NCBI GenBank assembly: GCA_002269645.1
Contig: NIVC01000302.1
Location: forward strand, 502,303 to 566,302
Length of the DNA: 64,000 nucleotides
Direction of reading: 5' to 3'
Origin: Macrostomum lignano
Lineage: Eukaryota
The notes under the pieces are model-generated. The model ran no database searches. It was not told the DNA's origin and worked only from the letters and a program-made list of their open reading frames with translations. This document shows positions 17,427 to 42,803 of the stretch, piece by piece (the stretch's first letter is position 1; every line of letters begins with the position of its first letter). A program made the position numbers and the translations under genes.

Positions 17427-20116
17427 CTCACAGTTGAACATAAAAGCCACAAATCTCACAGCTGAGGATCGAAGCCACAAATCTCACAGCTGGAGATGAA
17501 AGCCACAAATCTCACAGCTGAGGATCGAAGCCACAAATCTCACAGCTGAGGATCGAAGCCACAAATCTCACAGTTAAACATAAAAGCCACAAATCTCACA
17601 GCTGAGGATCGAAGCCACAAATCTCACAGTTAAACATAAAAGCCACAAATCTCACAGCTGAGGATCGAAGCCACAAATCTCACAGCTGAGGATCGAAGCC
17701 ACAAATCTCACAGCTGAGGATCGAAGCCACAAATCTCACAGCTGAGGATCGAAGCCACAAATCTCACAGCTGAGGATCGAAGTCACAAATCTCACAGCTG
17801 AGGATCGAAGCCACAAATCTCACAGTTAAACATAAAAGCCACAAATCTCACAGCTGAGGATCGAAGCCACAAATCTCACAGCTGAGGATCGAAGCCACAA
17901 ATCTCACAGCTGAGGATCGAAGCCACAATCTCACAGCTGAGGATCGAAGCCACAAATCTCACAGCTGAGGATCGAAGCCACAATCTCACAGCTGAGGATC
18001 GAAGCCACAAATCTCACAGTTAAACATAAAAGCCACAAATCTCACAGCTGAGGATCGAAGCCACAAATCTCACAGTTAAACATAAAAGCCACAAATCTCA
18101 CAGCTGAGGATCGAAGCCACAAATCTCACAGCTGAGGATCGAAGCCACAATCTCACAGCTGAGGATCGAAGCCACAAATCTCACAGCTGAGGATCGAAGC
18201 CACAATCTCACAGCTGAGGATCGAAGTCACAAATCTCACAGTTAAACATAAAAGCCACAAATCTCACAGCTGAGGATCGAAGCCACAATCTCACAGCTGA
18301 GGATCGAAGCCACAAATCTCACAGCTGAGGATCGAAGTCACAAATCTCACAGCTGAGGATCGAAGCCACAAATCTCACAGTTAAACATAAAAGCCACAAA
18401 TCTCACAGCTGAGGATCGAAGCCACAAATCTCACAGCTGAGGATCGAAGCCACAAATCTCACAGCTGAGGATCGAAGCCACAATCTCACAGCTGAGGATC
18501 GAAGCCACAAATCTCACAGCTGAGGATCGAAGCCACAAATCTCACAGCTGAGGATCGAAGCCACAATCTCACAGCTGAGGATCGAAGCCACAAATCTCAC
18601 AGTTAAACATAAAAGCCACAAATCTCACAGCTGAGGATCGAAGCCACAAATCTCACAGTTAAACATAAAAGCCACAAATCTCACAGCTGAGGATCGAAGC
18701 CACAAATCTCACAGCTGAGGATCGAAGCCACAATCTCACAGCTGAGGATCGAAGCCACAAATCTCACAGCTGAGGATCGAAGCCACAATCTCACAGCTGA
18801 GGATCGAAGTCACAAATCTCACAGTTAAACATAAAAGCCACAAATCTCACAGCTGAGGATCGAAGCCACAAATCTCACAGCTGAGGATCGAAGCCACAAA
18901 TCTCACAGCTGAGGATCGAAGCCACAAATCTCACAGCTGAGGATCGAAGTCACAAATCTCACAGTTAAACATAAAAGCCACAAATCTCACAGCTGAGGAT
19001 CGAAGCCACAATCTCACAGCTGAGGATCGAAGCCACAAATCTCACAGCTGAGGATCGAAGCCACAATCTCACAGCTGAGGATCGAAGCCACAAATCTCAC
19101 AGCTGAGGATCGAAGTCACAAATCTCACAGCTGAGGATCGAAGCCACAATCTCACAGCTGAGGATCGAAGCCACAAATCTCACAGTTAAACATAAAAGCC
19201 ACAAATCTCACAGCTGAGGATCGAAGCCACAAATCTCACAGTTAAACATAAAAGCCACAAATCTCACAGCTGAGGATCGAAGCCACAATCTCACAGCTGA
19301 GGATCGAAGCCACAAATCTCACAGCTGAGGATCGAAGCCACAATCTCACAGCTGAGGATCGAAGCCACAAATCTCACAGCTGGAGATGAAAGTCACAAAT
19401 CTCACAGCTGAGGATCGAAGCCACAAATCTCACAGCTGAGGATCGAAGCCACAAATCTCACAGTTAAACATAAAAGCCACAAATCTCACAGCTGAGGATC
19501 GAAGCCACAAATCTCACAGTTAAACATAAAAGCCACAAATCTCACAGCTGGAGATGAAAGTCACAAATCTCACAGCTGAGGATCGAAGCCACAAATCTCA
19601 CAGTTGAGGATCGAAGCCACAAATCTCACAGTTAAACATAAAAGCCACAAATCTCACAGCTGGAGATGAAAGTCACAAATCTCACAGCTGAGGATCGAAG
19701 CCACAAATCTCACAGCTGAGGATCGAAGCCACAAATCTCACAGTTAAACATAAAAGCCACAAATCTCACAGCTGAGGATCGAAGCCACAAATCTCACAGT
19801 TAAACATAAAAGCCACAAATCTCACAGCTGAGGATCGAAGCCACAAATCTCACAGTTAAACATAAAAGCCACAAATCTCACAGCTGAGGATCGAAGCCAC
19901 AAATCTCACAGTTAAACATAAAAGCCACAAATCTCACAGCTGAGGATCGAAGCCACAAATCTCACAGTTAAACATAAAAGCCACAAATCTCACAGCTGAG
20001 GATCGAAGCCACAAATCTCACAGTTAAACATAAAAGCCACAAATCTCACAGCTGAGGATCGAAGCCACAAATCTCACAGTTAAACATAAAAGCCACAAAT
20101 CTCACAGCTGGAGATC
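17427..20116. repeat. 28-bp satellite, about 96 units, two interleaved unit types
   Basis: Type A GAAGCCACAAATCTCACAGCTGAGGATC; type B AAAGCCACAAATCTCACAGTTAAACATA. Confidence 0.97.
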
Positions 20117-20460
20117 GCACCCAGGTCTTAAGACTCCGAAGCCGGACAATTTAGATAAAAGCAACAACCAATTAAACAGCAAGTTTATTGCAGTTTGACA
20201 GCAAATATGCACTGAATAGATAACTTATACCCATCCACTTAACAGCTTCACTTCTGACAATGAATTCTCAGCTTATATTTGCCATTCAGACACTTAAGCA
20301 TTCAACTGGTGTACATATTTGAGCCCAACATTGCCACATAAAGTTCACCCGCCAGCAGTCAAGTTCATGCAGCACAAGACATGGACAATCAATCAGTCAG
20401 CAACCACCTTCATACACAGAGCAATGCCCTCATTATCCAGCTATTCTCCCTAACACAGTG

Positions 20461-21162
20461 TCACGTGGCCTTGGCCCTCTGCGCAGCTCTCCTGCCCACC
20501 TGGGCCTGAAATCCAGACTTGATGCTGGCAACTGAGCACCGACTGCCGCAGGTGCTGCACTGCAGGAAGAACAGCCGAGTCTCCTTAACGAGCTCAGTGT
20601 CGTGAGACCGGCACGTGTGGCACATCACGTACTCCTTGATGTACGAGCGCAGCACCGATTCAATGTTCTTAGTCTGGAATCTGCCCTTAATAATGAGCTG
20701 GTTGTTCCCATCAACCGACCCGGTGGTGCCCAGCTCAGTTAGAAGGTAAGCCAACAGGTGGTCCGGCTTCCTTCGAATCTGCTTGCTGATCTCCGTGAAG
20801 TTGGCAAAGGCGGTCTTCTTGGTTCCAACTCGCATCAGAGACGGAGGCTTCATCACCACCTTCTTCTTCTCCGACAGCATATCCGGGTTCCGCTCCATCA
20901 TGGCGCGGAAGGCCCGGCTGAGCAGCTCGCTGTAGCTGTAATCCTTGTCCTCGCTTCCATCTCCCTCCACAGCTGACGCCGCGCCTTGGCCTCCGTCCTC
21001 CTCAGGCTGCTCAGCCGTCGCCGCGGGTCGCTCCTTCGGCGGCTTCTTCTTCTTCTTTGTTTCGAGGTTAAAGTCTGCTTCAAGCTCCTCATCCACTGCT
21101 GGGGTCTCCTCGGCCAGCTCCTTCTTCTTATTCTTCTTCTTTTTTATGCTCGGGTCGAACAT
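20461..21162 (-). CDS. EIF2S2: Translation initiation factor eIF2 beta subunit, main exon (copy 1)
   Basis: Poly-Lys boxes, core [11 protein letters not shown]...[18 protein letters not shown]...[14 protein letters not shown], and C4 zinc finger CHTC...CSTC; ATG directly follows a cgcag acceptor. Confidence 0.93.
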
Positions 21163-22599
21163 CTGCGCGAGTCAAACAGGGGAGTGAAAGGCATTGCAAA
21201 CAAAGAGCAACGAACGAAGATTAGCGACGAAAAGCATAGATTGATAATCGACACTATTGACAGAGGCGATAACAATAGAAGCATTGCCAACTTAGCACAC
21301 AGGCAAGAATTCGCACAGGCTGTATCGCTGGGGAGGTGATTATGTAACTTAATGAAGTCTAAACATACAAAAAAATTTTTGTCATGTGCTTCTTTATATG
21401 CAGGTTTTGTTAAGTGAACTTTTTCTTGCTGAACCTTGTTCTATATTGTAACTTTTTCATATGGAGCTTCCTGGTTGGTTTGGTTGGAGGCATGCATGAA
21501 ATAAATGAAAAGGCCAAGCAAGATAGTGCTTAAATGATTTCTCCAAGGAATTAATTGCCTGCGGGTTTGACATACTCTTTACTATAGACAACTAGCAGTG
21601 AGGCTCAAAATGCATGTGTTTTTGCTATCTTTCTAATGTAAGACATACTATTTGTAATGTGAGCACTTAACAATAGCTTTGCAATATGATTATATTGCAA
21701 CTAGCAATAGAACCAAATAAATGGTTGAAGGGTAAGCTAAAAATAATATCATAATATTCTAGAAGATGAACTAAACTAGATTGGATTTGTTCATGCTATG
21801 TGTAAATTTGAAGAGTAAAAAATACTTAGAGTCTATGGCTTCTATCTATAGCTTTTTCTATGAATTTTATCTATGGCCCAAAAACAAGCATGCAACATTC
21901 TAGCAAGAAGCAGTATAAATATAGTAAATATTGATTCAATAATTGGTTCACTTATTAGCTAATTTAAATGCCAGTTCAAGATGTATCTATGATGCTTTTT
22001 GATACCAATGTCATTTTGCCTATATCTAAAAATGCAAACTTCAAAACTATTTTTGTAAATAAGCATAAAATGACATGGCTTAAAAGATGTCTTTGGTACA
22101 AAGTTAGACTATTAGACAAATGGGTAGACTTAGTGAGTGGTTAGTCAAAGAAGATAGATATGCCTACTATGCCTTCATTACTGCAGCTTATATATATATA
22201 TATAGGACTGTCTATTCATCAGTTTTACTAATTAGTAATTGATTGTCTATTGTTTTAAAATGTATCAATATTTTCATTGAATATGTTGCTGTTATTTAGT
22301 ATTTATCATTAAACCAAATACTAGAGACAATAATTTTTAATATCAAAATTAAAAGTAATTTTTAGTAAAAATTGGCTTTTGTAATTGAAAAATCATTAAT
22401 TTTGTAGGCATTCTTTTGTTTTACAATCCCTGATAAGGTCAAGTTTTGTCTTACGATCCCCATTAAAAAGAGTCAAAAAAGACACTTTAGTTTATCAAAA
22501 AGTATGTTTCACATTTATTTTCCAAGAACAAAATCATTGCAACTCACTTTCCAGTCAACCTAATTCATCACTGCAACTCACTTTTCAATCAACTTGAGG

Positions 22600-23330
22600 A
22601 TCGTGGGCATAGCATTAGTTATGAAAGCACATAGCTTATATTCACTTTCGTCATATGATCATTTAAATGGTGAACTTATATGTTCTTATATTATCTTAAC
22701 TTATATTATATTCACAAGACAAAACTGAAAGAGCTTGTAGGTTTTGAATTATGATCACCACATTGATAGAATTATATTAAAGGGATTGTATGACGAAAGT
22801 AAATGGATTACACATTACATCCCTGGTGAAGTTGCACTAGTTCACGGCAACTTAAGATACGAACTGCTACATTGATCTCCATCATTGATCTACAGGGTTC
22901 AAGAATAAAATTGTATTCATTATAAGATTCACAAGCGCCACCCCCCTCACTTTTGTCATAAAATCCCCCCAGTTCATTAGACCTATGTGTTATATTGAGG
23001 GGTGAACGTATGACGAAAATGAAGGGGGGCATAGGGCGGCGGCGGTGCCCAAAAAGGCATACAAAAAGAGCCATGTAAAAAGAGCCAGGGGGCTTTCAGT
23101 TTGTAGACATATTAGAGGCTGCAATTGATTGTTTGGTTGAAACGTCTATTATAGTGACAATTTCCTACCATTTTGTCATACAATCTTTGCAATACAATTT
23201 TACTATTGGTGTGATTGTAAGTCAAAATCTACAAGCTCTTTTGGTTTCGTCTTGCAATTATCTGCATATAAATTCACCATTTAAATGATCGCATAACAAA
23301 AGTAAATATAAGGATAGGCTTCTAACTTCT
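22600..23330. mobile_element. Old foldback/MITE-like element with long imperfect inverted arms
   Basis: ATCATTTAAATGGTGAACTTATATG...AAGAGCTTGTAG (22655-22745) mirrors CTACAAGCTCTT...CATATAAATTCACCATTTAAATGATC (23230-23290); repeated GTATGACGAA/TTGTCATA motifs. Confidence 0.6.
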
Positions 23331-24276
23331 ATAAGACACAATATTTTATATTAAAATGACACAGAAGTGGTCCCATTTTGAAGTTTGATTTTAAGAGCAA
23401 TTTTCTGTCCTCTGTGGGGGATTGTATAACGAAAGTCCCGACTCCCATAGGGACAGTGCTAAGTGATCATAAAATGAAAGAATGCCATTTTGTAAATTAA
23501 AGATATACATTTTTAGGCTAATCTAAAGGCACATTAACTTGCTTGAGCACATTGACATGTACAATGGGGTATGGTCAAAATTGTTATATTCTAAATTATC
23601 ATATAAAGATGAAAACTTGGTTGGGGCAATCCATAAGATGTTAACATTTGAATATCACGAATTCATTAAGTTTCTTGAAAATGAAACCAAATGAAACAAA
23701 AAATATAGGACCCTAGAATAAGTTGAAGCAAATTTTTATAATAGCTAAAAAATAATATAACTTGATTCAAGTTTAAAAAATACATCTGCTTCTAATTATA
23801 GAGTTAGGCCCTAGCCTATCAAACCATTTCAAGGCAATCTTTCTATCATTCTTAATTAAAACTTAAATATTCAGTTAGACTATTAGTATTAACTTTAATA
23901 TAGGAATTAGTACAAGGCTTTTATAGGCCTATCTTTTAAGTGAATGGTATGAATGTAATTTACAGTTGAAAATCATTTTGTTGGCAAATAAGAACATATT
24001 GCTGCTATGAGAGCCCATATCCTTGCGCAGCCAATGAAATATAATATAATGATTTAGTGAATGCAGTATTGCCTAATGCTAAGACAATCATGATTTATAT
24101 AATTTAGTTGTTTTTCTTGTAACCAAATATGACAATCTCAAATATGATGACTTCAGCCAGAGCCATGCACTGGGTTTTTTTTTTCGCCAGAGATAAGGTG
24201 CGAAATCGCACCTTGTGCCAAATTTCAAGGTGCGATTTTAAGGATCAGAGTGCAATTTCTCTTGAGTCTTGTTTAG

Positions 24277-26571
24277 AATGTGAGGGTTTCACGAGAGATA
24301 TTCAGACAGACATTTGAAACGATCGTCTGTAACTTTAAACAAAATTGACCCGCTTCAACCATCTTTTTGGCAAATACTTACGCAAGTGTTGGGCGTCAAA
24401 AAAGCTTTAATTTATTAACTGAAGTAAAAATCCTTCTGACATACATTGATTTAAAAATTGCTTAGCAACACTAGCTCTGATTAGAAATCGCTTTACTGTT
24501 GACTAAAATTGTTTTGATCGTAGCAGCCTAAAAGCAGATACTGGATTTAAAAATACTTCGATTTACTCTATACGCATGTCTCAGCTTTAAAATGACACCT
24601 CAGGCGTCGCAAAAGACAGCTTTGATGCTGAGATATTCGACTCTAAACATGCATTGCTTTGCGCAATCTCACATTCAGAAATTTCACTGATTTTTTGTCG
24701 ATATTTGTGCAGCTGCCGTGTCCTTGTTTTTCATCAGAAACTTGTCAAATTCTAGTCATGTCCAGTTTAAACCTGGACTTCTCTTAAACTGTCTTAAGTA
24801 TTCGATTTTTAATGATTCCTGCCTTTATATTGCATAGATTGTACCTGAGTCAGTGAGTCTGTGAGTGTACATTTGTACATTTGGCAACCAATCATGACTT
24901 TTTCACCGCTTTGCGGTTCAAATAAATATACGAGTGTACAAGAAACATGTTCCAACTGTTATTGAGAGAAATTGACGTCGCGTTTATTAACAGTCAGTGG
25001 CAATTAATATGAAGCAAATAGTTTATTGTTATGTTTTTACTTTTTTTGCGTGGCAATTCTGCTATCCAAATCGGAATGAGGTAAGCGGTGGGAATAAAAT
25101 AAAAAGGAAGAATTTTTTCTACTGTTGTTGCAACCCAATAGCTATATGTACTTCAAACTTTTTAGATTGAACAGGCGATTTCTAATGTACTGCTAAGCTT
25201 TCCAATCCCTACGGACTACAGTAGCAGTTCTTAACTTTTTTTCTGTCTTGACTTCTAGACTCGGAATTCGGAACAACCTAAGGAGCCACATGAAAATATT
25301 TAATTGGATAAAGATATTTTCTAAAAACAGCTCAAGTCGTGACACATCTTCTTCTCACCTCAGTCCATCAACTGCTGCTCCTTCTGAGACCAAAGCGATC
25401 GTGAAAGTAAAACAGATCAGTTTAGATCCCATGGCCATGAATACAACCATTTCAATTGTGAACCTGCTTTGCTTACAAGTACGAGCACTAGCCTTCCATT
25501 TGATGCCATTAGCTCACTTAACTCTGAAATAGTTCAAGGACGGTTCCAAATGTTGAGATCTGACGTAGAAGCAGTCCAATTTGTGGAAATTTATCAACTG
25601 GACTCCATGAATCACTCCAATGAAAGGCGGCGAATAGCTGTAGAATGCGTAAACAAGTTTAAGTGAGTCACAAAAACCCCATTTACTGTAACTACATACA
25701 CTTGTACGTTAGCAAGGCTCCATGCGATGGTTAATAAATGGAGAAGTAGACAAGCATCTGAACAAATATTGAATAAAAATCAGTGAAGTTTCCGAATGTG
25801 AGTTTGAGCAAAGCAATGTTTAGTGTCGAATATCTCAGCATCAAAGCTGTCTTTTGCAATTCCTGAGGTGTCATTTTAAAGCTGAGACATGCGTATAGAG
25901 TAAATCAAAGCATTTTTAAATCCAGTATCTGCTTTTAGGCTGCTACGATCAAAACAATTTTAGTCAACAGTAAAGCGATTTCTAATCAGAGCTAGTGTTG
26001 CTAAGCAATTTTTAAATCAATGTATGTCAGAAGGATTTTTACTTCAGTTAATAAATTAAAGCTTATTTGACGCCCAACACTTGCGTAAGTATTTGCCAAA
26101 AAGATGGTTGAAGCGGGTCAATTTTGTTTGAAGTTACAGACAATCATTTTGAATGTCTGTCTGAATGGGTCTCCCTAAAACACGCCCCGCACCGCCCTGC
26201 AGCGCTACACATTAAAACAAATTGGACTATAACTAAAGACACTTCAGAATGCGTTTTCTGTTAAGCTTCAAGTTTTTATTAAATTTAGTTTTTTTTACTT
26301 TGAAATATAAAATTCGGTGAACAAAAAGTGATATTAATAATAATATTAATAAAATAATAATATTATAATTTAATAATGAAAACGAGAATATAAAAAATAA
26401 TAATATTTAAAAAAATAAATAAAGATATTTATTCCATTACTATTTTAACTTTTCCTTGCAATCAAATACTGCATTGACAAAAAATGTTATAATGTGTAGC
26501 AGTTCGGGGCCCGGTGCGGGGCGTGTTTTAGGGAGCCTTTGTCTGAATATCTCTCGTGAAACCCTCACATT
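24277..26571. mobile_element. Foldback-type element with ~420-bp inverted arms
   Basis: 24277-24695 is the reverse complement of 25775-26166 plus 26549-26571 at high identity; no TSD found. Confidence 0.8.
26167..26539. mobile_element. Mutator-like MITE inserted in the foldback right arm
   Basis: TIR CTCCCTAAAACACGCCCCGCACCG / CGGTGCGGGGCGTGTTTTAGGGAG; 9-bp TSD TGTCTGAAT at 26158-26166 and 26540-26548; the left arm shows the empty site. Confidence 0.8.
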
Positions 26572-28417
26572 GCTCACATTTCAGACAACTGGGAATGTAT
26601 ATTTTAATATCTTACATAAGGCTATAGCTATAGGCTATATCGCCTATATGACTTAATAGGATTTAAAGAGTTATTTTGTTTTATATTTTAAGGCAGTGCA
26701 TAAAAAATAGCTTAAGCATGGTTAAGCCTTTAAAGAAAAATGGTTATAAGACCGCACCTAAACCGCACATACTTTTTTAATTTCAGGGTGCGATTTTAAA
26801 ATTTAGGGTGCATACGCACACTCTGCGCACAAAACCCTGGCCATGCAATGTGCCCTCACATCAATACAACAATGGCCCCTCCCAATTTGAAATATGCTCT
26901 AACCAATAGCAGATTTAGAGGGGGTGCACAAGGTGCGCCTACCCCATCGAGTTTTTTATATGTAAAATACACATTATCATGTATATAATACTTGTACATG
27001 ATATGCATATATATGTACCTGGCTTAGTAGTCTGTGCCCCCAATTCAAAATTTTCTGGATCCACTACTGGCTCCAACACCACTGCTTATACCTCAATAAA
27101 TGAATTGGTAGGCTGCTAGTATACACTTACTGGTTCAGATGATTCCTCCATGTCCATAGTTAATTCCAAAGCCTGTCTGTCTGTCACACGAAATCAAAAA
27201 AATCAAGCTTGCTTTTTTATCCAAAAAGTGATACTTTACTTGACTTATTTGAACTAAAACTTATTAGATATCACTAATTTGCTCAAATTAATTAATAAAT
27301 CGTTATATTACAATAGGTCGGTCGATTGGATTGAAGTTTATTAACAAGATACTTTATCTATGTATGTAATCTTAACGTATTTATTTGATGATCTAGAAGA
27401 GGCAGGCCAGGTCAAGAAAAATGACGAAATTTTATTTCATCGCAATCATAAATATGATTTGTTGAATAAATGCTTCAGTTTAATTTTCGTTTCGAAAATA
27501 AATCCAGCAACTGTTATACATTAGTTTTTATTTTTTAAATCTAAGATGTGTTTTACTAAATAAGTTTGTTATATACTTTAAGCCGTGGCTGTCCTTCAGC
27601 ACAATTTACAGTAGTAACAGATAACTTTAAGTCAGTGAACGCCAGAGGCTAGGGGAGTGGGAGGTCGATGGTCGTCTTTTTCTCGCTGCACTCTGCACCG
27701 CTGGCCTACTAGCTTAGGCGCGTGTCGAGCGGTTATTCGCGAAACTGCAGACATTGCTCCAATATTAATCTTCGAAAGCGAACGTAAAAAGCTTAAAATA
27801 GAAAGCTTCAACTCGGGGACTACTGAAGCAGGATGGAAAACTACGTTTCAAAATTTGTCGTTGCTTTTCACAGGAGACAGATCCTAGCGTACATCTTCTG
27901 ATATATGACTTGCCTTTCTTATAGCTAGCTCTAATTGATGTTCATAGAGTTTTTTTGTTTAAAAGATAAGGATTCGAAGTTAATTAAATTGACTAGACTT
28001 ACTAAAAAATTAAGCTTTTTCATAAATATGGCCTATACATGTAGGAGAGTACTTAGCCTAAAAATTGAAGCCTTTTATTCTCTGGTTTAATGAAGGCTAT
28101 TAATTATAGATTGCAGATTATAAAGTTATAACTTATATATAGCTGAGCATGCATAGATAGACGTATTTTTTCGGTAAAACCTGCCTTTCTAAACATTTCC
28201 AAAAATTAAACGTAGTAATTCTCAAATTCTGTCACTCGAACAATCCTTGTTCAAATTTTATGTAGATTTAACATTTAATTAGCTGAAATTAAGTAGACCT
28301 ACGGGCAGGGGTAGTTATTGATTAACGCCAATCTACTACATGTAAGTTAAAAAATTTTAAATGACAAAAGTCGCTTTAGATTCAGAGTATCCGAAATTTC
28401 AATTGGTTAGTCTAAAT

Positions 28418-28750
28418 AATATAATAATAATAATAATAATAATAATTGATTACACCTGTCTTAATGGGCCTTAATGAGCAGATGTGTGCAACCGACAGCT
28501 CAGCCGCAGCTATTGCCCGGCGCATCTGAAGGCTGCGTACGGCTGTTCAGTCCAAGGACTGGGGGGGGGGGGTCGCCACACACCCTCAATTACCCCAGCT
28601 AATGCTGGCACCCATTTTACAGCTGGGTGAACTGAAGCAATGCAGAGTTTAATTTCTTGCTCAAGGATACAAATTGTTTCAGTAGGATCGGGAATCGAAC
28701 CCCCGACCTTCAAGTCGTGAGTCCGACGCTCTGACCACTAGGCTACAACC
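28418..28750 (-). mobile_element. tRNA-derived SINE, family A (second, less decayed copy)
   Basis: Minus strand GTAGCCTAGTGGTCAGAGCG...GGTTCGATTCC; core TCCTTGAGCAAG...CACCCAGCTGTAAAATGGG; (TTA)n tail. Confidence 0.85.
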
Positions 28751-29073
28751 CACTTTTAGTCTAAAGCAGAGAATAAAGTAGTAAAAATACACCGTTTTGT
28801 AGCTTGCTTAATAAAATAGTAAGTAAGCATAAATTAGATAGGTAATTATCTTTATTGCAGTTGCATCGTTTCTGGCATTTGAAATATTGGAATTTGCTTT
28901 CTTGTGTACATACAAGTTAGTAACGCAGTATAAAATCTAGATAGAAGTGTCGTGATAACGCTTAGTTATACATTTAATTCTGACCTGATTGCACTGTACG
29001 AGACCTTTAAAACAGCGAAATATTGGCACAATAATAAACCGTCATTTATTTTGGTTTACACCAAAGGAAATAT

Positions 29074-29340
29074 TCATTTAGGCTTCAAAGCCGGCGCCGC
29101 AGTCACAACTAATTCGTCAAAAGCCGTCGCCGGGTCCGGCTCCCTGGTAAAGACCAGACCAGCGTGACAGCCAAGGACAACCTCGGCAGTTGTGTACACA
29201 ATATCGTCGCCAAGGAGGTGGCCACCAATCGCACGGCCGTGCTCGTCCGACAGGCAAATATGCAGATGGCACGATTGGCCGCCCTGGCTGATGGTGCCAA
29301 CCAGTGAAACAATTTCCATGTGGCGTTGCAGCAGTTCGGA
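29074..29340 (-). CDS. PPC/DUF296 domain protein, last exon
   Basis: ttattgcag acceptor, phase 0; EIVSLVGT...HLHICLSDEHGRAIGGHL...TTAEVVLG...FTREPDPATAFDEL is the DUF296 signature; ends at TGA. Confidence 0.88.
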   Translation of the reverse strand, partial: SELLQRHMEIVSLVGTISQGGQSCHLHICLSDEHGRAIGGHLLGDDIVYTTAEVVLGCHAGLVFTREPDPATAFDELVVTAAPALKPK

Positions 29341-29540
29341 CTGCAATAAAAGATTATCCCATCGGATATAATAGAACGGATGCCAACTGGCGTTAGTTGA
29401 AAATTAGAAATTTGAAAGAGCACTAATGAAATTTCAATAATCCCAATAATTATAAAATCAGTGATACTTTAAACCAAAGGTCGACAACCTCCGACCCGCG
29501 AAACTTCATAATAGCAATCTGCATGCCCGCTCAGGGTCTC

Positions 29541-31010: not shown

Positions 31011-31024
31011 TGGCGACGAGGATG
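31011..31024 (+). other. Primer-binding site complementary to the tRNA-Ser(GCU) 3' end
   Basis: TGGCGACGAGGATG one base after the 5' LTR; the animal tRNA-Ser(GCU) ends ...CATCCTCGTCGCCA (recalled, not searched). Confidence 0.8.
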
Positions 31025-32185
31025 AGCGGACCCAGCCTTCCAGCACCAGCGCCTTTCCTTCCCGTGAGCGGCCAACCGGCAGTACCGTGGCCAAGATGGC
31101 TGGACGCGTTCGAATTCTTCTACACGGCATCCCAGTTTCGGGAGCCGGAGGGGCAATCCGAGGCAGAACCCACAAAGAGGAATCTGCTACTCCACCTGCT
31201 CGGATTCGAAGGCCAGCGCATTGCCAAGGCGAGGCAAGCACTCACGGAGGGAGATTCCTTCAAGGAGACGAAGGCAAAGCTGGACGGGATCTTCGGAGAG
31301 AAGCCCAACGTGATGGTGGCTCGCTTCCGATTCCGCCAACGACACCAGCTGCCCGGCGAAGACGCGGAGTCGTTCGTGGCCGCGCTCAGGGAGCTGGCCG
31401 AGCCCTGCGAGTACGGAAATCTCCGAGACCAGCTCATCAGAGACCAACTGGCAGAGAAGACTGGCAGCGCTCGCATCCGGGAGCGACTGCTGACGGAAGA
31501 CGCGGCTACTCTCACGCTGGAGAGGGCCCTCGCCATCGCCGTCACCATCGAGAAGGCGTCAAAGGGCTGTCAGGCTCTGATGGGCACAGCGGAGCCCGTG
31601 CACGCGGTCCGGCAGGCGCAGAAGCCAAAGGCGAAGTGGAGTGGCGCGGCGAAGCCAGCTAAGAAAGGCCAGCAAAGTCGACCCGCCGCCAAGGCCTGCT
31701 CTCGCTGCGGACGCAGTCACGGCGACGGCAACTGCCCAGCGAAGGGGCAGTCCTGCAACAACTGCGGCAAGATGAACCATTTCAGCCGTTGCTGCCGGAG
31801 CAAGGCGCTCCAAGTGACCGGCCAGGCTCAGGACGGCCCGGACGAGGCGGTCACTATATACGCCGTGCAGGGAGACGGTGAGATCCGTGCGCAGCTGCAT
31901 CTCGGACAAGCAGAGGTGCCGGTCAATACTCTGATCGACTGCGGCGCCAAGGTGTCACTGTTGAACGCCGACACGGCCGCGCTCCTGACCGACGTGCTAC
32001 CTCAGCCGACAACGATGAAGCTGCGCGCATACGGCGGCAAGCTGATCGATCTCGTGGGCCAAGCGGCGGTTCCCGTTAAGCACAACAACCGGTCTCTGCA
32101 ACACCTATTCTACATCGCGAAGCACGGCGACAACATCGCAGGTCGAGACCTCATGGATAAGCTCGGTTTCCATGTGAGCCTGTGA
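31022..32185 (+). CDS. Gypsy Gag-protease ORF
   Basis: Retrotransposon gag (RFRFRQRHQLPGE...LRDQL), zinc knuckles CSRCGRSH...C and CNNCGKMNHFSRCC, aspartic protease LIDCGAKVSLL. Confidence 0.9.
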   Translation: MSGPSLPAPAPFLPVSGQPAVPWPRWLDAFEFFYTASQFREPEGQSEAEPTKRNLLLHLLGFEGQRIAKARQALTEGDSFKETKAKLDGIFGEKPNVMVARFRFRQRHQLPGEDAESFVAALRELAEPCEYGNLRDQLIRDQLAEKTGSARIRERLLTEDAATLTLERALAIAVTIEKASKGCQALMGTAEPVHAVRQAQKPKAKWSGAAKPAKKGQQSRPAAKACSRCGRSHGDGNCPAKGQSCNNCGKMNHFSRCCRSKALQVTGQAQDGPDEAVTIYAVQGDGEIRAQLHLGQAEVPVNTLIDCGAKVSLLNADTAALLTDVLPQPTTMKLRAYGGKLIDLVGQAAVPVKHNNRSLQHLFYIAKHGDNIAGRDLMDKLGFHVSL

Positions 32186-32198
32186 GGACGTCAGCGAG

Positions 32199-33048
32199 GT
32201 GAACAGCGTCGCGGAGCAGCTGGAGGCGCGGTTCCCAGCGGCCTTTAGCGAGCAGATCGGCTGCTGCAGCGGAGCCGTGCACAAGCCCGTCATCGACCCC
32301 TCCATGCCGCCAGTGCGCCAGCCTCTGCGTCGTCTACCGCTGGCCAAGCAGCAGCTGGTGGAGGCTGAGCTCGACAAACTGGAGGCGGCTGGCATCATCG
32401 AGCGAGTCGACTCGAGTCGCTGGGTGTCAAACCTGGTGACCACCACCAAAAAGGACGGCAGCATCAGGGTCTGCGTCGATATCCGGGAGCCCAACAAGGC
32501 GGTGATATGCGACCAACACCCGATGCCCCAGCTGGACGACATCGCTGCCAAGATCAAGGGGGCCAAAGGACAGATCTTCAGCAAGGTGGACCTGAAGGCC
32601 GGCTACATGCAGATGGAGCTGCATGAGTCTTCGCGCGACCTGACAGCCTTCATCACGCACAAGGGCCTATACAGGTACTGCCGAGTGCCGTTCGGTTTGA
32701 CGTCAGCGCCTGCGGCGTTCCAGCGCATGCTCGACGATCTGGTGGCCGACCTGGACGGCGTGGAGCACATCCTCGACGATTTCATCATCTTCGGTGCCAC
32801 CACGACGGAGCACGACCGCTGTTTGGAGGCTCTACTGCGGCGACTCTGTGACAGGGGCTTGACAGTGAACAAGCAGAAATGTGAGTTCCGACAGCCGCAG
32901 ATCGAATTCTTCGGCTTCCTAGTTTCCGGCGACGGGTTCCGTGTTGGCGATTCGCGTACGCGTGCTTTCGAAGAGATCCGGGCTCCGACCTCCCAGAAGG
33001 AGCTGCAGTCGTTCCTGGGCGCCGCCAACTTCCTCAGGCGTTTCATCC
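32199..33048 (+). CDS. Gypsy pol, RT N-terminal part (cut by an insertion)
   Basis: KKDGSIRVCVD, FSKVDLKAGYMQ, PFGLTSAPAAFQ, HILDD, LQSFLGAANFLRRFI. Confidence 0.92.
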
Positions 33049-33366
33049 TATCCTCGTCGCCAATGTGGTGTCTCAACAGACTAACACAGGAAACGAGTAC
33101 GTGGCAGGTAAGACTTTTTGCCGGAAAAAAGGTACGAGCTCCACTTAGGGCAACCCGCGCTTATATTTGATATTTAACAGTAAATTGTTACACGATCGAT
33201 AAATTCAACCGCCAAAATGTCACGTGAATACGATACATTACAATACAATATACGAATAATTTATTAACTGCACTACTTAAAGTAGAGTAGTAAGAAAAAG
33301 TAAGAAAAGGTTAGTTAGACGAACGGCCCTTTTACGGGCTCCTAGTCACGACACAACATTTTCCCC
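33049..33366 (-). mobile_element. Inverted PPT-LTR-PBS fragment of the same retrotransposon
   Basis: Minus strand reads GGGGAAAA + complete 295-bp LTR (33064-33358) + T + TGGCGACGAGGAT; CATCC is present on both sides (33044-33048, 33367-33371). Confidence 0.93.
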
Positions 33367-35299
33367 CATCCCGCACTTCTCGGACATCACGGAGCCGCTG
33401 CGCAAGCTGCTTAAGGCCGACGCGGAGTTCAGCTGGTCCGAAGAGTGCCAGCAGTCTTTCGACGCGCTGAAGCAGGCGGTCAGCAGCCCGCCAGTTTTGG
33501 CTTTGTTCGACCCCGCAGCCGTTACGATTGTCACTACGGACGCCAGCTCAGTCGCCCTGGGCGCCCAGCTGTCCCAGCTGCAGGACGGCGTCGAGCGGCC
33601 GATTGCCTTCGCCGCCCGAGCGCTCACAGAGACCGAGCGGCGCTACGCAGCCAACGAACGAGAAGCCCTGGCGTGTCTCTGGGCCATGGAAAAGTGGCAT
33701 TTCTTCCTGTACGGGAGGCACTTTGAGCTCAGAACGGATCATCAGTCTCTGCGGCAGCTGCTGATGGGACCTAGCGGCACCGGGCACCGGCCGCTCCGCA
33801 TCCACAGGTGGTGCGACAGGTACCAACAGTATGACTTCCACGTCCGCTATCTACCCGGCGAGAGCAACTGCATGGCCGACCTCCTGTCCCGGTGGAGCAA
33901 CGGCTCCGACATGAACTTCGTCCAGCTGCCCGACACCGCGATGCCCAGGGTGCCCGCGTTGTCACTGTCCGAGCTGGCGGAGGCGACGACCAAGGACGAG
34001 ACGCTGCGACGGGTGCGGCAACACGTGTTGAACGGCGACTGGCCCAGGCGCACCGCGGACTCCGAACTCAAGCCGTACCTGCTGGCGCGACAACACCTAA
34101 GCGTCTGGCACGACGCTTCCTGCCTGGCGTTTCAGGAGCGAGCCGTCATTCCGGCGGAGCTGAGGCGCGGCGTCTTGGAACAGGCGCACACCGGACACCC
34201 AGGCGTGGTGCGCACAAAACAGATCCTGCGAGAGTCCGTCTGGTGGCCGCGACTCGACGCTGATGTCGAAACCTTCATCAGGGGCTGCGGCGCGTGTGAG
34301 ACGGCGGAGAAGAACTTCAAGCTGCACCCAGCGCCGCTGCAGCCGATCGAGTGGCCCGCGGGTCCGTGGGAGGAGATCGCCGTCGACATCGTCGGTGAAC
34401 TGCACGAAGCGCCGCAATCGTCCCGGTTCCTGCTGGTGGTTACGGACCTGCATAGCAAGTGGCCGGTGGTCTTCGCCACGGCTAGCATCACAACCGAAAC
34501 CGTCTGCAAGGTGATGCGGTCCCTGTTCGCTCGCTGGGGTCTCTGCAAGAAGGTCATCAGCGACAACGGCCCGCAGTTCGGCGCGGCCTTCACAGAGTTC
34601 CTGCGAGCTCGGGGTATCCAACACCGCAAGACCAGCCTCTACCACCCGAGCACGAACGGCCAGACTGAGCGGCTCAACCGGACGCTGCTTTCCAGCATTC
34701 GAGCGGCCAAGGCAGACTGCACGCCGCTGTCCGACGCCATCACCCAGTTCCTGGAGGTCTACAGGAGCACGCCGCACAGCCTGACGGGCAGGAGCCCCGC
34801 CGAGCTCATGCTAGGGCGATCGATGCGGACGATGCTGACTGCCCTGGCACCGCCCAAAGACATCAATGAGACGGACGAGGGACGGCGACTGAGCGAGACC
34901 ATCTACTACCGGCAACAGCGGACCAAGCGCTACACGGACCTATGCCGCCGGGCGCGAGTCAGCGACCTCCGACCAGGCGATTGGGTCCGAGTGCGGCGGC
35001 CCATCAAGAAGGGCAAGCTGGCCACGAGACTGTCCGGCCCGCTACAGATCATGACCAAGGCCGGCGCCGCGTACTGGCTGAGCGACGGCACAACCTGGAA
35101 TCAACAGGCGTTGGTCCCCACAAGCGCTAGGGCCTACGGCGACCAGGACGCCGAGCTCGACCCGCTGGTGCATGGCGAACTCGGCGGTGACAGCGATGCG
35201 GCGGCAATGGCGCAGCCGGCGGGGCTTCCCAGCGAAGTCCAACCAAGGCGCTCGGCCAGGGCCCGACGACCTTCGGAGCGGTACCAAGCGGGACTGTGA
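33367..35299 (+). CDS. Gypsy pol, RT C-terminus, RNase H and integrase
   Basis: Resumes IPHFSDITEPL in the frame of ORF 33497; TDASSVALGA, ANEREAL, HTGHPG...CGAC, VDIV...SDNGPQF...NGQTER (D,D35E). Confidence 0.92.
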
Positions 35300-35644
35300 T
35301 GTCCGTGCTCTCGGGAGGGGGGAAAATGTTGTGTCGTGACTAGGAGCCCGTAAAAGGGCCGTTCGTCTAACTAACCTTTTCTTACTTTTTCTTACTACTC
35401 TACTTTAAGTAGTGCAGTTAATAAATTATTCGTATATTGTATTGTGAAACGTATTTTTAATCACGTGACATTTTGGCGGTTGAATTTATCGATCATGTAA
35501 CAATTTACTGTTAAATATCAAATATAAGCGCAGGTTGCCCTAAGTGGAGCTCGTACCTTTTTTTCCAGCAAAAAGTCTTACCTGCCACGTACTCGTGTTT
35601 CCTGTGTTAGTCTGTTGAGACACCACAGATTGCCATTGTCCAGA

Positions 35645-38403: not shown

Positions 38404-38424
38404 ATGGATGAGCCTGCCGAGCCT
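38404..38424 (+). CDS. EIF2S2: Candidate eIF2-beta exon 1 (MDEPAEP) for copy 2
   Basis: ATG GAT GAG CCT GCC GAG CCT|gtaagc is a phase-0 donor compatible with the acceptor at 41470; vertebrate eIF2-beta likewise has a few residues before MIFDP. Confidence 0.5.
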
Positions 38425-38787
38425 GTAAGCATTGTTATTTTTTAAACCAAGCCTAGCTTGCTTGAGCGTTGAGCTTAAGATAAATAGGGTAAAAAGAAAT
38501 TATGTTAAATAATTTCTAGTTATTTGATGTTTGGCAATGGCAATAGGCCTATCTAGGCCTATTCCACATTTAGAAAATTATAGCCATAGGCTAGGCAGCC
38601 TAGGCCTAGGTCTAATTATACCATGTATGCTAGATAGGCCTATTTCTAACATCTTATTTGTAATTTCTACCTTGCCCTAGCTAGGCCTATATTTATGATA
38701 TTGATAGCTAACATATATGCCTGAATTTTGGTATATTAATATAGCATGCACTTTGTGATACACATATTTATTAAGGACCATAGTCTA

Positions 38788-39642
38788 GATGGGATGGAAG
38801 GCCCATCACAAGCTCAAGAAATCATATTGTCAAAAAGCATCCACTATCACAAGCTTGAAAAGTCATAAGCTTGAAAAATCATATCATCAAAAAAATTAGA
38901 GCCAATACTATCACAAGCTCAAAAACTCATAAGCTCGAAAAATAACATCGTCAAAAACTGATTTAGCAACCCACAAGCTCGACTTTAAGCTCAAAAAATC
39001 ATATTGTCAAAAAGTTTAGCAACCACTATCACAAGCTTGAAAAGTCATAAGCTCAAAAAATCACATTGTCAAAAACTGATTTAGCAGTCACTATCACAAG
39101 CTCAAAAAGTCATAAGTTTGAAAAATCACATTGTCAAAAAGTTTTAGCAACCATCATAACAAGCTCAAAAAGTTATAAGCTCAAAAAATCATAAGCTCAA
39201 AAATTCACAAGCTCGAAAAGTCACATCGTCGAAAAGGTTAGTAACTACCATCACAAGCTTGAATAGGGTTAGGGTTAGAGCTTATGCCTTAGGGTTAGGG
39301 CTTAGGGTTAAGTTTAAGGTTGGGGTTAGAACTTGTGCCCTAAGGTTAGGGTTTAGGGTTAGGGTCAAGGTAAGAACTAGTGCCTTTAAGTTAGGGTTTA
39401 GGTTTAGGTTAGGGTTGGGATTAGGGTTAAGGTAATAGTTCAGGGTTAGGCAGGGTACTAGTGCCTTAGAGTTAGGGTTAGTGCCTTTGGGTTAGGGTTA
39501 GAGCTTGTGCCTTTTTGAGCTTGTGATGATGTTTGCTAAACTTTTTGACAATGTGATTTTTTTAAGCTTGTGACTTTTCAAGCTTGTGATAGAGCCTTGT
39601 TTTTGACAATGTGATTTTTCGAGTTTATAATGGCAACCCATC
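38788..39642. mobile_element. Non-autonomous DNA element with TA flanks, inverted subterminal repeats and an internal TTAGGG-like tract
   Basis: TCTA|GATGGG ... CCCATC|TAGA; ACAAGCTC/TTGTCAAAAA repeats on the left mirror GAGCTTGT/TTTTTGACAA on the right; degenerate GGGTTA at 39263-39500. Confidence 0.65.
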
Positions 39643-41470
39643 TAGATCATGGCAAGTAGATATAGCCTAGGGCCTAGGGGCCTACTTAGTAGGCCTAATG
39701 AAAATTATTGTTTTTTGATATTATTCCAATATAAAAAATAACCCAGAGGTCAAAAATAAAGTTGCTGTATGCAAAATTAGTATTGCATACAGCAATACTA
39801 ATTTTTAGTATAAAATTTAAAAATTAGTATAAAAAATTTGAAACAAAATATCTTTTTTTTATAAAATATTTTTTGTCTTTGAGGGTTTTCTAATTTCCAA
39901 TAAATATTTTGATAAACATTCAAAACAATTGTCTGTAACTTTTAACAAAAGTTGACTTGCTTCAACTATTTTTAGCAAATATTTGTGCAATTGTTTGATA
40001 TCAAATGAGCTTTGATTTATTTTTATTAAATAAAATGAAAAATCTTTTTAAGATACATTGATTCAATATTGCTTAGCAACATATATGCGCAACCCCCCTG
40101 ATTTACACTGGCCATGCGACTTACTTTTTTGACCAAAAATGCAACTTACCTGTAAATGCAATTATGGGTAAACGGCAGGAGTAACTATGACTGTCTTATA
40201 AGGCTAAATGCCTCGTCATCTAATTAGTACTATGTCTATTTTTAAGCTTGGCATTATTGCAACTTACCCCTGGTCCACCACAATTTATGGTGGCCAAATC
40301 GGCCAGGTCGGCCAGCAGTTGTGCATGTTATGCTTAGCAACACTCTGATTGGTAATATGGTAATATCACTTTACCATTAGGGCCTAACTGAAATTGTTTG
40401 AAGCATAGTAGCCTAAACATAAATGCTAGTTTATCCAAGTGATTTAAAATTTATTGAGTAACAAATAAAAAAAGCAAGCTTATATATAAAAGACTACGAA
40501 AAGCAGAAAAAGTAAGAAGTTTCTTCTTCCAAGAAATTTGAAAATTGAAAGCTAATTAATTATTAAAATATAAAAAAGAAGGTTGTTTCAATTGCACTGT
40601 CAGGCACAATAGAAAGTTATAAAAGATTGCTAATATACATTATATATATAGTATAGAAATAAATCAAGTATAAATGCTTATATGTAGATATAGGCAAGAA
40701 TTACTTTATATTTTAATAATGAAAGCAATAAGTAAGAAGATTTGTTAATATTGCATGGTCATCCTCATAAACAAAAAATTATTTAGGCATATAGGTAGAT
40801 TTAATTATAATATAACTTCTTGTCAAATATATAAAGTACAATAAAACATTAGCAAACTCTAACTTTTATTAATGTGAAAAAGTTAGCAGTAGTACTTTCA
40901 GTAGTGATTAAGTATTGTTAGTCTTTGTAAAAGATTAAATATAATCCTACAAAGGCAATCGAGTGTTTGTTTTATTTTCTACCTTAATTTGCAGTTTTTT
41001 AAGCACCAGGATATCTTCCAGGTTCAAAATATTTGGTTTCCTAGATTTTTTGTTAAAACTACAGCTATGGCTCTATGGGAATATGAGAATCTTGGGGTCC
41101 CCATGGCTATGGAATACAGAGAATTGGAATAAGCCATAGTTTTTGTTTATGGCTATGGCACATGGACCCTCCTTATGGCAGAACACTACCTTTGTATCTC
41201 AAAATATGTTATAAAGTTGCAGAAAAATACTCTGTGAAAATACATTGTTGGTACAAGTATATATTTTAAATACTATACCCAAGCTTTTATGGATACAAAA
41301 ATGTGAAGTTGTATTCTTATCAAATTTTGTCAATTAGTTAATTAGAATGTAGCTGAGTGGTCTTAGCACTGTAATACTCAAAAGCATTGCCCGTGTCACT
41401 TTTAAGCGACTAATAATTATGATTTATGATTGTTTGCCATGCCTTTCGCTCCCCTGTTTGACTCGCGCAG

Positions 41471-42172
41471 ATGTTCGACCCGAGCATAAAAAAGAAGAAG
41501 AATAAGAAGAAGGAGCTGGCCGAGGAGACCCCAGCAGTGGATGAGGAGCTTGAAGCAGACTTTAACCTCGAAACAAAGAAGAAGAAGAAGCCGCCGAAGG
41601 AGCGACCCGCGGCGACGGCTGAGCAGCCTGAGGAGGACGGAGGCCAAGGCGCGGCGTCAGCTGTGGAGGGAGATGGAAGCGAGGACAAGGATTACAGCTA
41701 CAGCGAGCTGCTCAGCCGGGCCTTCCGCGCCATGATGGAGCGGAACCCGGATATGCTGTCGGAGAAGAAGAAGGTGGTGATGAAGCCTCCGTCTCTGATG
41801 CGAGTTGGAACCAAGAAGACCGCCTTTGCCAACTTCACGGAGATCAGCAAGCAGATTCGAAGGAAGCCGGACCACCTGTTGGCTTACCTTCTAACTGAGC
41901 TGGGCACCACCGGGTCGGTTGATGGGAACAACCAGCTCATTATTAAGGGCAGATTCCAGACTAAGAACATTGAATCGGTGCTGCGCTCGTACATCAAGGA
42001 GTACGTGATGTGCCACACGTGCCGGTCTCACGACACTGAGCTCGTTAAGGAGACTCGGCTGTTCTTCCTGCAGTGCAGCACCTGCGGCAGTCGGTGCTCA
42101 GTTGCCAGCATCAAGTCTGGATTTCAGGCCCAGGTGGGCAGGAGAGCTGCGCAGAGGGCCAAGGCCACGTGA
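41471..42172 (+). CDS. EIF2S2: Translation initiation factor eIF2 beta subunit, main exon (copy 2)
   Basis: The 233-aa translation is identical to copy 1; same cgcag|ATG acceptor. Confidence 0.95.
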
Positions 42173-42528
42173 CACTGTGTTAGGGAGAATAGCTGGATAA
42201 TGAGGGCATTGCTCTGTGTATGAAGATGGTTGCTGACTGATTGATTGTCCATGTCTTGTGCTGCATGAACTTGACTGCTGGCGGGTGAACTTTATGTGGC
42301 AATGTTGGGCTCAAATATGTACATCGTCATCAGTTGAATGATTAAGTGTCTGGATGGCAAATATAAGCTGAGAAGTCATTGTCAGAAGTGAAGCTGTTAA
42401 GTGGATGGGTATAAGTTATCTATTCAGTGCATATTTGCTGTCAAACTGCAATAAACTTGCTGTTTAATTGGTTGTTGCTTTTATCAAATTTGACCGGCTT
42501 CGGAGTCTTAAGACCTGGGTGCGATCTC

Positions 42529-42803
42529 CAGCTGTGAGATTTGTGACTTCGATCCTCAGCTGTGAGATTTGTGGCTTTGATCCTCAGTTGTGAGATTTGT
42601 GGCTTCGATCCTCAGCTGTGAGATTTGTGGCTTTGATCCTCAGTTGTGAGATTTGCGTCTTCGATCATCAGCTGTGAGATTTGTGGCTTCGATCCTCAGT
42701 TGTAAGATTTGTGGCTTCGATAATCAGCTGTGAGATTTGTGGCTTCGATCCTCAGTTGTAAGATTTGTGGCTTCGATCATCAGCTGTGAGATTTGTGGCT
42801 TCG
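42529..42803. repeat. 28-bp satellite (reverse complement of 17427-20116), about 10 units
   Basis: GCTGTGAGATTTGTGGCTTCGATCCTCA units directly after the eIF2-beta 3' region. Confidence 0.95.

What the first reader, a model, noticed from the sequence alone, without database searches (positions are those of the whole stretch)
20100..42803. Inverted, divergent duplication of the eIF2-beta main exon with identical protein
Seen: 20461-21162 (minus) and 41471-42172 (plus) encode the same 233 aa, and their off-frame ORFs are also identical. The 3' flanks differ by several substitutions and a small indel. Upstream homology stops ~40 bp before the ATG (about 21203 / 41430), so only the splice acceptor was copied. 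A candidate exon 1 (38404-38424) exists for copy 2; I saw none for copy 1. Inference: a partial duplicate kept intact by selection or gene conversion, and able to start at its own ATG.
Basis: partly seen in the sequence, partly recalled or inferred. Interest (0 to 1): 0.7.

Follow-up and report, generated by a model that had tools for sequence, protein, structure and literature searches.

The report
Partial inverted duplicate of flatworm eIF2-beta
The flatworm Macrostomum lignano carries a second, head-to-head copy of the main exon of its translation factor eIF2-beta that lacks the first exon and promoter; it is a real but fairly ordinary partial gene duplicate, and whether it is expressed is untested.

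Summary
The window is Macrostomum lignano, assembly Mlig_3_7, contig NIVC01000302.1. Window 20310-21203 (-) and 41430-42323 (+) differ at 3 of 894 bases. The 702-nt reading frames are identical. Homology then runs at about 90% into a shared 28-bp minisatellite.

The + copy ("E") has the proposed exon 1 at 38404-38424 (MDEPAEP, GTAAGC donor). The - copy ("N") keeps only 41 nt of intron with the acceptor, plus the ORF, 3'UTR and AATAAA.

Two other contigs carry the same E+N pair with the same breakpoint and the same copy-specific differences. This argues against a mis-assembly, and the duplication predates the split of the three loci. It is a DNA-level duplicate, not a retrocopy.

Site patterns need at least four exchanges among the copies, which points to gene conversion. 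The evidence that the coding sequence is homogenised beyond what selection explains is modest (P about 0.02-0.2).

M. lignano trans-splices about 30% of its genes to a 35-nt leader ending in AUG. The orphan acceptor of N could therefore accept the leader, with its AUG in frame. This is inference; no transcript data could be reached. An unexpressed relic is the main rival.

It is a new member of a known kind, of modest interest.

The parts
41471..42172 (+). E copy: main coding exon of eIF2-beta (233 codons plus stop).
   Evidence: Translation. Pfam PF01873 at 136 bits against a cutoff of 27. Human eIF2S2 match at E=5.8e-72. Best database hits are M. lignano proteins.
38404..38424 (+). E copy exon 1: ATG GAT GAG CCT GCC GAG CCT (MDEPAEP), followed by donor GTAAGC. 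The start context is acattATGG.
   Evidence: It matches the N-terminus of PAA76725.1/P0122.
38425..41470 (+). E copy intron: 3046 nt, phase 0, ending ...ctcgcgcag. Only its last 41 nt (41430-41470) are shared with the N copy.
42173..42521 (+). E copy 3'UTR, with AATAAA at 42450-42455.
   Evidence: Site table.
42522..42803 (+). 28-bp minisatellite, 10 copies. It marks the distal end of the duplicated segment on the E side.
   Evidence: No homology beyond it.
20461..21162 (-). N copy: an identical 233-codon ORF plus stop, with no exon 1.
   Evidence: There are 0 differences in 702 nt.
21163..21203 (-). N copy: 41 nt of retained intron 3' end (pyrimidine tract plus CAG acceptor). It carries two fixed differences from E, at 21195 and 21185. 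This is the orphan acceptor.
20118..20460 (-). N copy 3'UTR, with AATAAA at 20184-20189. It holds the copy-diagnostic sites, for example 20407 and the missing 6 bp.
17423..20117 (-). The same 28-bp minisatellite, expanded to about 97 copies. It marks the distal end of the duplicated segment on the N side.
21204..29073 (-). Sequence upstream of the N copy, with no homology to the E intron or promoter. It would be the outron if N is transcribed. It contains a 2.67-kb transposon at 24172-26839.
29074..30153 (-). PCC (PF03479) domain gene in the spacer, on the same strand as the N copy and upstream of it.
   Evidence: Called genes. Pfam result.
30723..35627 (+). Ty3/Gypsy LTR retrotransposon in the spacer, lying between the PCC gene and exon 1.

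Best explanation
This is a genuine DNA-level, 5'-truncated, head-to-head segmental duplicate of the eIF2-beta (EIF2S2) gene of Macrostomum lignano.

The copied unit is a promoter-less cassette. It holds the last 41 nt of the intron with the 3' splice site, the whole main exon, the 3'UTR with AATAAA, and part of a 28-bp minisatellite. The main exon begins with an ATG and encodes everything except 7 non-conserved N-terminal residues.

Shown: the duplication is older than the split of the three versions of this locus in the assembly. Also shown: the copies have exchanged sequence since then. That exchange, most likely gene conversion between the inverted repeats, is why the coding regions are identical.

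Inferred: if the N copy is transcribed from anywhere upstream, its acceptor has no cis donor. It would then be joined to the 35-nt spliced leader. The leader's terminal AUG is in frame, giving MMFDPS... (234 aa), or 233 aa from the exon's own AUG. The product would be an eIF2-beta with both lysine boxes, the core domain and the zinc ribbon.

Confidence in the structural part is about 0.9. Confidence in sequence exchange is about 0.75. Confidence that N is expressed via the spliced leader is about 0.4-0.45. The overall figure given for this explanation (0.5) is for the statement as a whole, including the inferred expression step.
For: The window is an exact match to NIVC01000302.1 loci L004 and L005.

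The same pair occurs in NIVC01000799.1 (L001 and L003) and NIVC01003981.1 (L002 and L006). Upstream of -42, all E copies are alike and all N copies are alike, while E and N cannot be aligned with each other. The fixed E/N differences at -33 and -23 are present in all three loci.

It is not a retrocopy. Intron sequence is retained, and homology runs past AATAAA into the minisatellite.

Evidence for exchange: 799_E and 799_N share a derived A>G at +145 and a complex multi-base change at +981 to +995, both absent from the other four copies. Among 17 informative sites there are 49 four-gamete-incompatible pairs, giving Rm=4.

There are 0 synonymous differences over 155 synonymous sites, against about 2.5% divergence in shared non-coding sequence. 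This gives P(0) of about 0.02.

Trans-splicing background comes from PMC8629364. The leader is CGGTCTCTTACTGCGAAGACTCAATTTATTGCATG. About 30% of genes are trans-spliced. An acceptor without an upstream cis donor is sufficient, citing Conrad 1993.

The domain content of the 233-aa product is.
Against: No transcript evidence could be obtained. The 233-aa protein is not on record in the assembly or transcript collection. The gene IDs are absent from the searchable papers and supplements.

The acceptor GCGCAG matches only the CAG of the enriched trans-splice motif YTNCAG.

The nearest same-strand upstream gene (PCC) is 5.9-9.1 kb away, well over the 1-kb operon threshold. No promoter is evident upstream of N.

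The GenBank models on the N copies are 5'-partial. They could come from multi-mapping of E transcripts.

The mosaic patterns are concentrated in contig 799. Its E side is unusually divergent from the window (96.5% and 93% against 99.4-99.9% in the flanks). Haplotype switching or short-read polishing artefacts could therefore contribute.

If only the oldest E/N differences are counted, P(0 synonymous differences) rises to 0.06-0.2.
Confidence: 0.5

Rival explanations
1. The N copy is a transcriptionally silent relic. It is a promoter-less fragment whose intact ORF reflects only its low divergence and repeated gene conversion from the expressed E copy, not selection or function.
For: N has no exon 1, no homologous promoter and no nearby upstream gene. 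Exchange between the copies is documented. Overall divergence among copies and loci is only 0.5-2.5%, so an intact 702-nt ORF is not strong evidence of constraint. The public models on N are 5'-partial and identical in sequence to E, so they do not show that N is expressed.
Against: The cassette has stayed complete in all three loci, with acceptor, ATG, ORF and AATAAA and no disabling change. The 600 nt upstream of N differs less between loci (0-6 differences) than the E intron does (10-15 differences). In a species that trans-splices about 30% of its genes, an orphan acceptor in any transcribed region is usable.
Confidence: 0.33
2. The N copy is expressed by cis-splicing from an unrecognised upstream exon. 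This could be a novel first exon in 21204-29000, or a donor of the upstream PCC gene through read-through, giving an alternative or chimeric N-terminus.
For: The PCC gene lies upstream on the same strand in all three loci. The acceptor and pyrimidine tract are intact.
Against: No MDEPAEP-like exon exists upstream of N. No gene model is annotated in the 6-9 kb between PCC and N. Nothing in the sequence singles out a donor.
Confidence: 0.1
3. The pair is an assembly artefact: a mis-joined haplotype, or a copy homogenised by polishing.
For: Mlig_3_7 is a redundant assembly of a line with extra chromosomes and more than half repeats. Short-read polishing could erase true differences between near-identical copies.
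Against: Three separate contigs show the same head-to-head arrangement and the same breakpoint at -41/-42. They share the same copy-specific bases at -33 and -23 and the same distinct unique flanks on each side. The arms are about 1.4 kb and separated by 20 kb of unique sequence with its own genes. That layout is not the pattern of a palindromic read artefact.
Confidence: 0.03

Closest known systems
Partial (5'-truncated) segmental gene duplicates, as catalogued in Caenorhabditis elegans (Katju and Lynch 2003; from my own knowledge, not checked here)
   Same: It is a DNA-level copy whose boundary falls inside the gene, so it lacks the promoter and first exon. It is young and lies close to its parent.
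   Different: The breakpoint here leaves a complete splice acceptor immediately followed by an ATG and the full functional ORF. The truncation therefore removes only 7 non-conserved residues.
Inverted-repeat gene pairs homogenised by gene conversion, for example the arms of human Y-chromosome palindromes or the Drosophila Hsp70 inverted pairs (own knowledge)
   Same: The copies are head-to-head with a unique spacer. They are near-identical while the repeat edges diverge. Site patterns require exchange.
   Different: The arms are short (about 1.1 kb plus minisatellite) and only one arm is a complete gene. The statistical support for conversion of the coding part is modest.
Outron-type spliced-leader trans-spliced genes of M. 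lignano and other flatworms and nematodes (PMC8629364; Conrad et al. 1993 as cited there)
   Same: An acceptor with no known cis donor sits directly before the coding sequence. The leader ends in AUG, and that AUG is in frame.
   Different: Leader-containing reads at this acceptor could not be examined. The acceptor lacks the YT of the enriched YTNCAG motif. The acceptor was born as a cis-splice site.
Processed EIF2S2 pseudogenes (retrocopies) of mammals (own knowledge)
   Same: It is an extra copy of eIF2-beta coding sequence that lacks the parental promoter.
   Different: It retains 41 nt of intron, lacks the exon 1 sequence and has no poly(A) tail. Homology also continues past the polyadenylation signal.

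Membership tests
eIF2-beta (EIF2S2/SUI3) | An eIF-5_eIF-2B domain (PF01873) scoring above the curated threshold. | tested here: met
   136 bits against a cutoff of 27, residues 97-208. Human eIF2S2 match at E=5.8e-72 over residues 28-232.
eIF2-beta (EIF2S2/SUI3) | N-terminal lysine blocks (K-boxes). | tested here: met
   There are two runs, KKKKNKKK and KKKKK, both in the main exon. [10 protein letters not shown] aligns with human IFDPTMSKKKK and yeast FDPALKKKK. Human and yeast have three blocks.
eIF2-beta (EIF2S2/SUI3) | A C-terminal C2-C2 zinc ribbon. | tested here: met
   CHTC...CSTC aligns with human CHTC...CETC.
Processed retrocopy | No intron sequence, with exon 1 fused directly to exon 2. 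| tested here: not met
   41 nt of intron with the acceptor is retained, and there is no exon 1 sequence.
Processed retrocopy | Homology ends at the poly(A) site with an A-tract. | tested here: not met
   Homology continues past AATAAA (42450-42455 / 20184-20189) into the minisatellite.
Spliced-leader trans-spliced gene of M. lignano | [quoted passage not shown] | tested here: inconclusive
   The acceptor is present and intact. No homologue of exon 1 lies upstream. However, the absence of any usable donor cannot be shown from sequence alone.
Spliced-leader trans-spliced gene of M. lignano | The enriched acceptor motif [T/C]TNCAG. | tested here: not met
   The site reads GCGCAG, so only the CAG matches. 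The motif was found at 9551 of 21754 trans-splice sites, so it is not obligatory.
Spliced-leader trans-spliced gene of M. lignano | RNA reads that join the leader to the acceptor and can be assigned to this copy. | not testable with these tools
   No RNA data could be reached. E and N are identical from -22 to +755, so short junction reads could not tell them apart in any case.
Downstream gene of an M. lignano operon | A same-strand upstream gene within 1 kb after repeats are subtracted. | tested here: not met
   The PCC gene is 7.9 kb upstream in the window, of which 2.67 kb is a transposon. The distance is 5.9 kb in contig 3981 and 9.1 kb in contig 799.
Inverted duplicates under concerted evolution | Paralogues within one locus share derived variants that are absent from the orthologous copies. 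| tested here: met
   The change at +145 and the complex change at +981 to +995 are shared by 799_E and 799_N only. Rm=4. Caveat: assembly or polishing artefacts cannot be excluded.

The most novel reading that the evidence does not exclude
In a trans-splicing animal whose leader supplies an AUG, a duplication breakpoint anywhere in the first intron yields a ready-to-use gene cassette. Under this reading, the N copy is a functional second eIF2-beta gene. It would be expressed under regulation different from its parent, trans-spliced at a former cis-acceptor, and kept identical to its parent by gene conversion. This would be a concrete case of spliced-leader trans-splicing rescuing promoter-less partial duplicates.
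Probability: 0.3. Interest if true: 0.5.

Novelty: new member of a known kind. Interest (0 to 1): 0.3.

Why it matters
If the N copy is expressed, it is a clean natural example of how spliced-leader trans-splicing lowers the barrier for 5'-truncated duplicates to become working genes. It would also add a second source of an essential translation factor in a stem-cell and regeneration model.

There are practical consequences as well. The assembly holds six near-identical eIF2-beta exons (three loci, two each). This complicates RNAi, knockout design and expression quantification for this gene.

The GenBank models in this contig also need correction. Both are 5'-partial 226-aa models, and they ignore exon 1 at 38404.

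If the N copy is silent, it is simply one more young partial duplicate in a repeat-rich, hidden-polyploid genome.

Tried and rejected
Retrocopy: rejected. Intron sequence is retained and homology runs past the poly(A) signal.

Capture by a transposon: no terminal inverted repeats or other element signature bracket the N copy.

Hidden exon 1 for N: a degenerate pattern for M[D/E]EPAEP finds only 38404. blastn of the 5.4 kb upstream of E against the 9.5 kb upstream of N finds only a shared transposon fragment, 39904-40081 against 24298-24470 / 25996-26156.

Homology beyond the minisatellite: none.

Spliced-leader RNA gene in the window: none.

Known RNA families and tRNAs in the window: none.

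Transcript evidence was sought in several ways, without result:
- An exact look-up of the 233-aa protein found nothing.
- The gene IDs Mlig014777, Mlig004290 and Mlig022373 and the name EIF2S2 were not found in the main texts, or in the supplements of four M. lignano papers.

A related Macrostomum transcript (L007) shows MEEP|MFDPS joined and a 152-nt 5'UTR with no leader. It says nothing about the N copy.

Operon with the PCC gene: the distance is too large.

Between-locus identity of the coding sequence is not remarkable, because loci differ by only 0.5-2%.
Full report
**1. What and where**

The 233-aa ORF is eIF2-beta. Pfam PF01873 scores 136 bits against a cutoff of 27. Human eIF2S2 matches at E=5.8e-72, and [10 protein letters not shown] aligns with the human and yeast first lysine box.

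The best database hits are Macrostomum lignano proteins of assembly GCA_002269645.1, also called Mlig_3_7. Two 20.7-kb loci of contig NIVC01000302.1 are exact substrings of the window. The window therefore comes from that contig.

**2.

The two ORFs, 20461-21162 (-) and 41471-42172 (+), are identical. The arms 20310-21203 and 41430-42323 differ at 3 of 894 positions. Homology then continues at about 90% to 19836/42803.

Over that extension there are 8 substitutions in the 3'UTR and a 6-bp indel at 42322-42327. It ends in a shared 28-bp minisatellite, with 10 copies after the + copy and about 97 after the - copy.

Homology stops 41 nt upstream of the ATG. Nothing else in the flanks is homologous except a transposon fragment.

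I call the + copy E and the - copy N.

**3. Gene structure**

E has a 21-nt first coding exon at 38404-38424. It encodes MDEPAEP, is followed by GTAAGC, and has a good start context. This matches the N-terminus of the annotated sister-locus protein PAA76725.1.

A 3046-nt phase-0 intron ends in ...ctcgcgcag directly before the ATG of the main exon.

N has no such exon. It keeps the pyrimidine tract and acceptor, the full ORF, the 3'UTR and AATAAA.

Intron sequence is retained and homology runs past the poly(A) signal. This is therefore a DNA-level duplication, not a retrocopy.

The 7 missing residues are not conserved. They read MEEPAEP in another locus and MEEP in a related species.

**4. Not a mis-assembly, and older than the locus split**

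Two further contigs hold the same head-to-head pair with a PCC-domain gene in the spacer. They are NIVC01000799.1 (L001=E, L003=N) and NIVC01003981.1 (L002=E, L006=N).

- In the 600 nt upstream, all E copies agree (0-15 differences) and all N copies agree (0-6 differences). E against N cannot be aligned beyond -42.
- The differences at -33 and -23 are fixed between E and N in all three loci.
- Outer flanks are also conserved copy by copy.

The assembly is known to be redundant, because the sequenced DV1 line has duplicated large chromosomes. That explains why there are three versions of the locus. Contig 302 and contig 799 are 99.4-99.9% identical in most flanks. Contig 302 and contig 3981 differ by 0.5-2% in substitutions, plus transposon presence or absence.

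**5. Why the copies are identical**

Among six aligned copies there are 17 informative sites and 49 four-gamete-incompatible pairs. This requires at least four exchanges or recurrent hits.

The clearest case is in contig 799. Its E and N copies share a derived A>G at +145 and a complex multi-base change at +981 to +995. Both changes are absent from the other four copies. That pattern requires transfer between the paralogues.

In the window, E and N show 0 differences over 155 synonymous sites, against 10 substitutions in about 393 shared non-coding bases. This gives P(0) of about 0.02. Counting only differences seen in two or more loci raises P to 0.06-0.2.

Exchange is therefore well supported. 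Extra homogenisation of the coding part is only suggested.

Two caveats apply:
- The E side of contig 799 is oddly divergent from the window: 96.5% over 40831-42803 and 93% over 42804-43542.
- Short-read polishing could blur near-identical copies.

Selection on N cannot be measured, because there are no coding differences.

**6. How N could work (inference)**

M. lignano trans-splices about 30% of its genes to the 35-nt leader CGGTCTCTTACTGCGAAGACTCAATTTATTGCATG. An acceptor that lacks an upstream cis donor is sufficient for this (PMC8629364).

Joining the leader to the N acceptor puts the leader's AUG in frame. The product would be MMFDPS..., 234 aa.

The weak points are these:
- The acceptor is GCGCAG, not YTNCAG.
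- No promoter is evident upstream of N.
- The same-strand PCC gene is 5.9-9.1 kb upstream, beyond the operon threshold.
- No RNA data could be reached.

The GenBank models on the N copies are 5'-partial: 232 aa starting at codon 2 in contig 799, and 226 aa in the window. They cannot prove copy-specific expression, because the sequences are identical to E.

**7. Verdict**

This is a real, conserved, partial inverted duplicate that exchanges sequence with its parent. Whether it is expressed is open. I put about 0.4-0.45 on leader-dependent expression, about 0.33 on a silent relic, about 0.1 on another cis exon and about 0.03 on an artefact.

It is a new member of a known kind (partial segmental duplicates, concerted evolution of inverted repeats) and of modest interest. 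The trans-splicing angle is the part worth testing.

Noticed in passing
window 24172-26839: A 2.67-kb insertion with imperfect terminal inverted repeats (C[A/T]GGGTTTT...) and an 8-bp target-site duplication, GCCATGCA. It has long internal inverted repeats at 24293-24650 and 25816-26173. The site is empty in both sister contigs (799 and 3981). It looks like a recent, hAT-like non-autonomous transposon insertion. A related fragment lies in the E intron at 39904-40081.
   Followed up: partly
window 30723-35627: A Ty3/Gypsy LTR retrotransposon with gag-like, RT, RNase H and integrase regions. It has TG...CA ends and a 5-bp target-site duplication, GATTG. It is present in contigs 302 and 799, but the site is empty in contig 3981. 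An inverted LTR-like copy (33050-33358) sits between the RT and RNase H reading frames. The two direct LTRs are only about 91% identical.
   Followed up: partly
window 29074-30153 (-): A spliced gene with a PCC domain (PF03479, 'Plants and Prokaryotes Conserved'). This is an unusual domain for an animal. It is present with introns in all three loci, so it is not contamination.
   Followed up: no
window 40831-43542 against L001 12606-16228: Contig 799 is 99.4-99.9% identical to the window in most of the region. Identity drops to 96.5% and then 93% from the end of the E intron, through E exon 2 and beyond, after which alignment stops. 799_E also has 5 private coding changes, 2 of them non-synonymous. 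Possible causes are a haplotype switch in the assembly, conversion from an unsampled copy, or a real recombinant.
   Followed up: partly
window 39264-39450 (E intron): A degenerate telomere-like TTAGGG/TAGGGT repeat tract lies inside the intron of the E copy.
   Followed up: no
whole window, e.g. 52856-57714, 61162-63080, 4449-5344, 10526-11190, 43441-44204: The density of minisatellites (periods 18-50 bp) is very high. One 31-bp unit is repeated about 156 times. Some of these arrays create long spurious ORFs.
   Followed up: no
L002 near 15127 (contig 3981 E copy), matching window 41492-41494: A 3-bp AAG deletion removes one lysine from the first lysine box (KKKKNKKK becomes KKKNKKK) in the 3981 E copy only. 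This indel coincides with the point where the 226-aa 5'-partial GenBank models on the other copies begin. The coincidence suggests an annotation artefact from mapping that transcript.
   Followed up: partly
window 38404-42172: The GenBank model for the E copy of this contig is a 5'-partial 226-aa protein. It omits the intact exon 1 at 38404-38424 and the first 7 codons of exon 2. The complete product should be 240 aa.
   Followed up: yes
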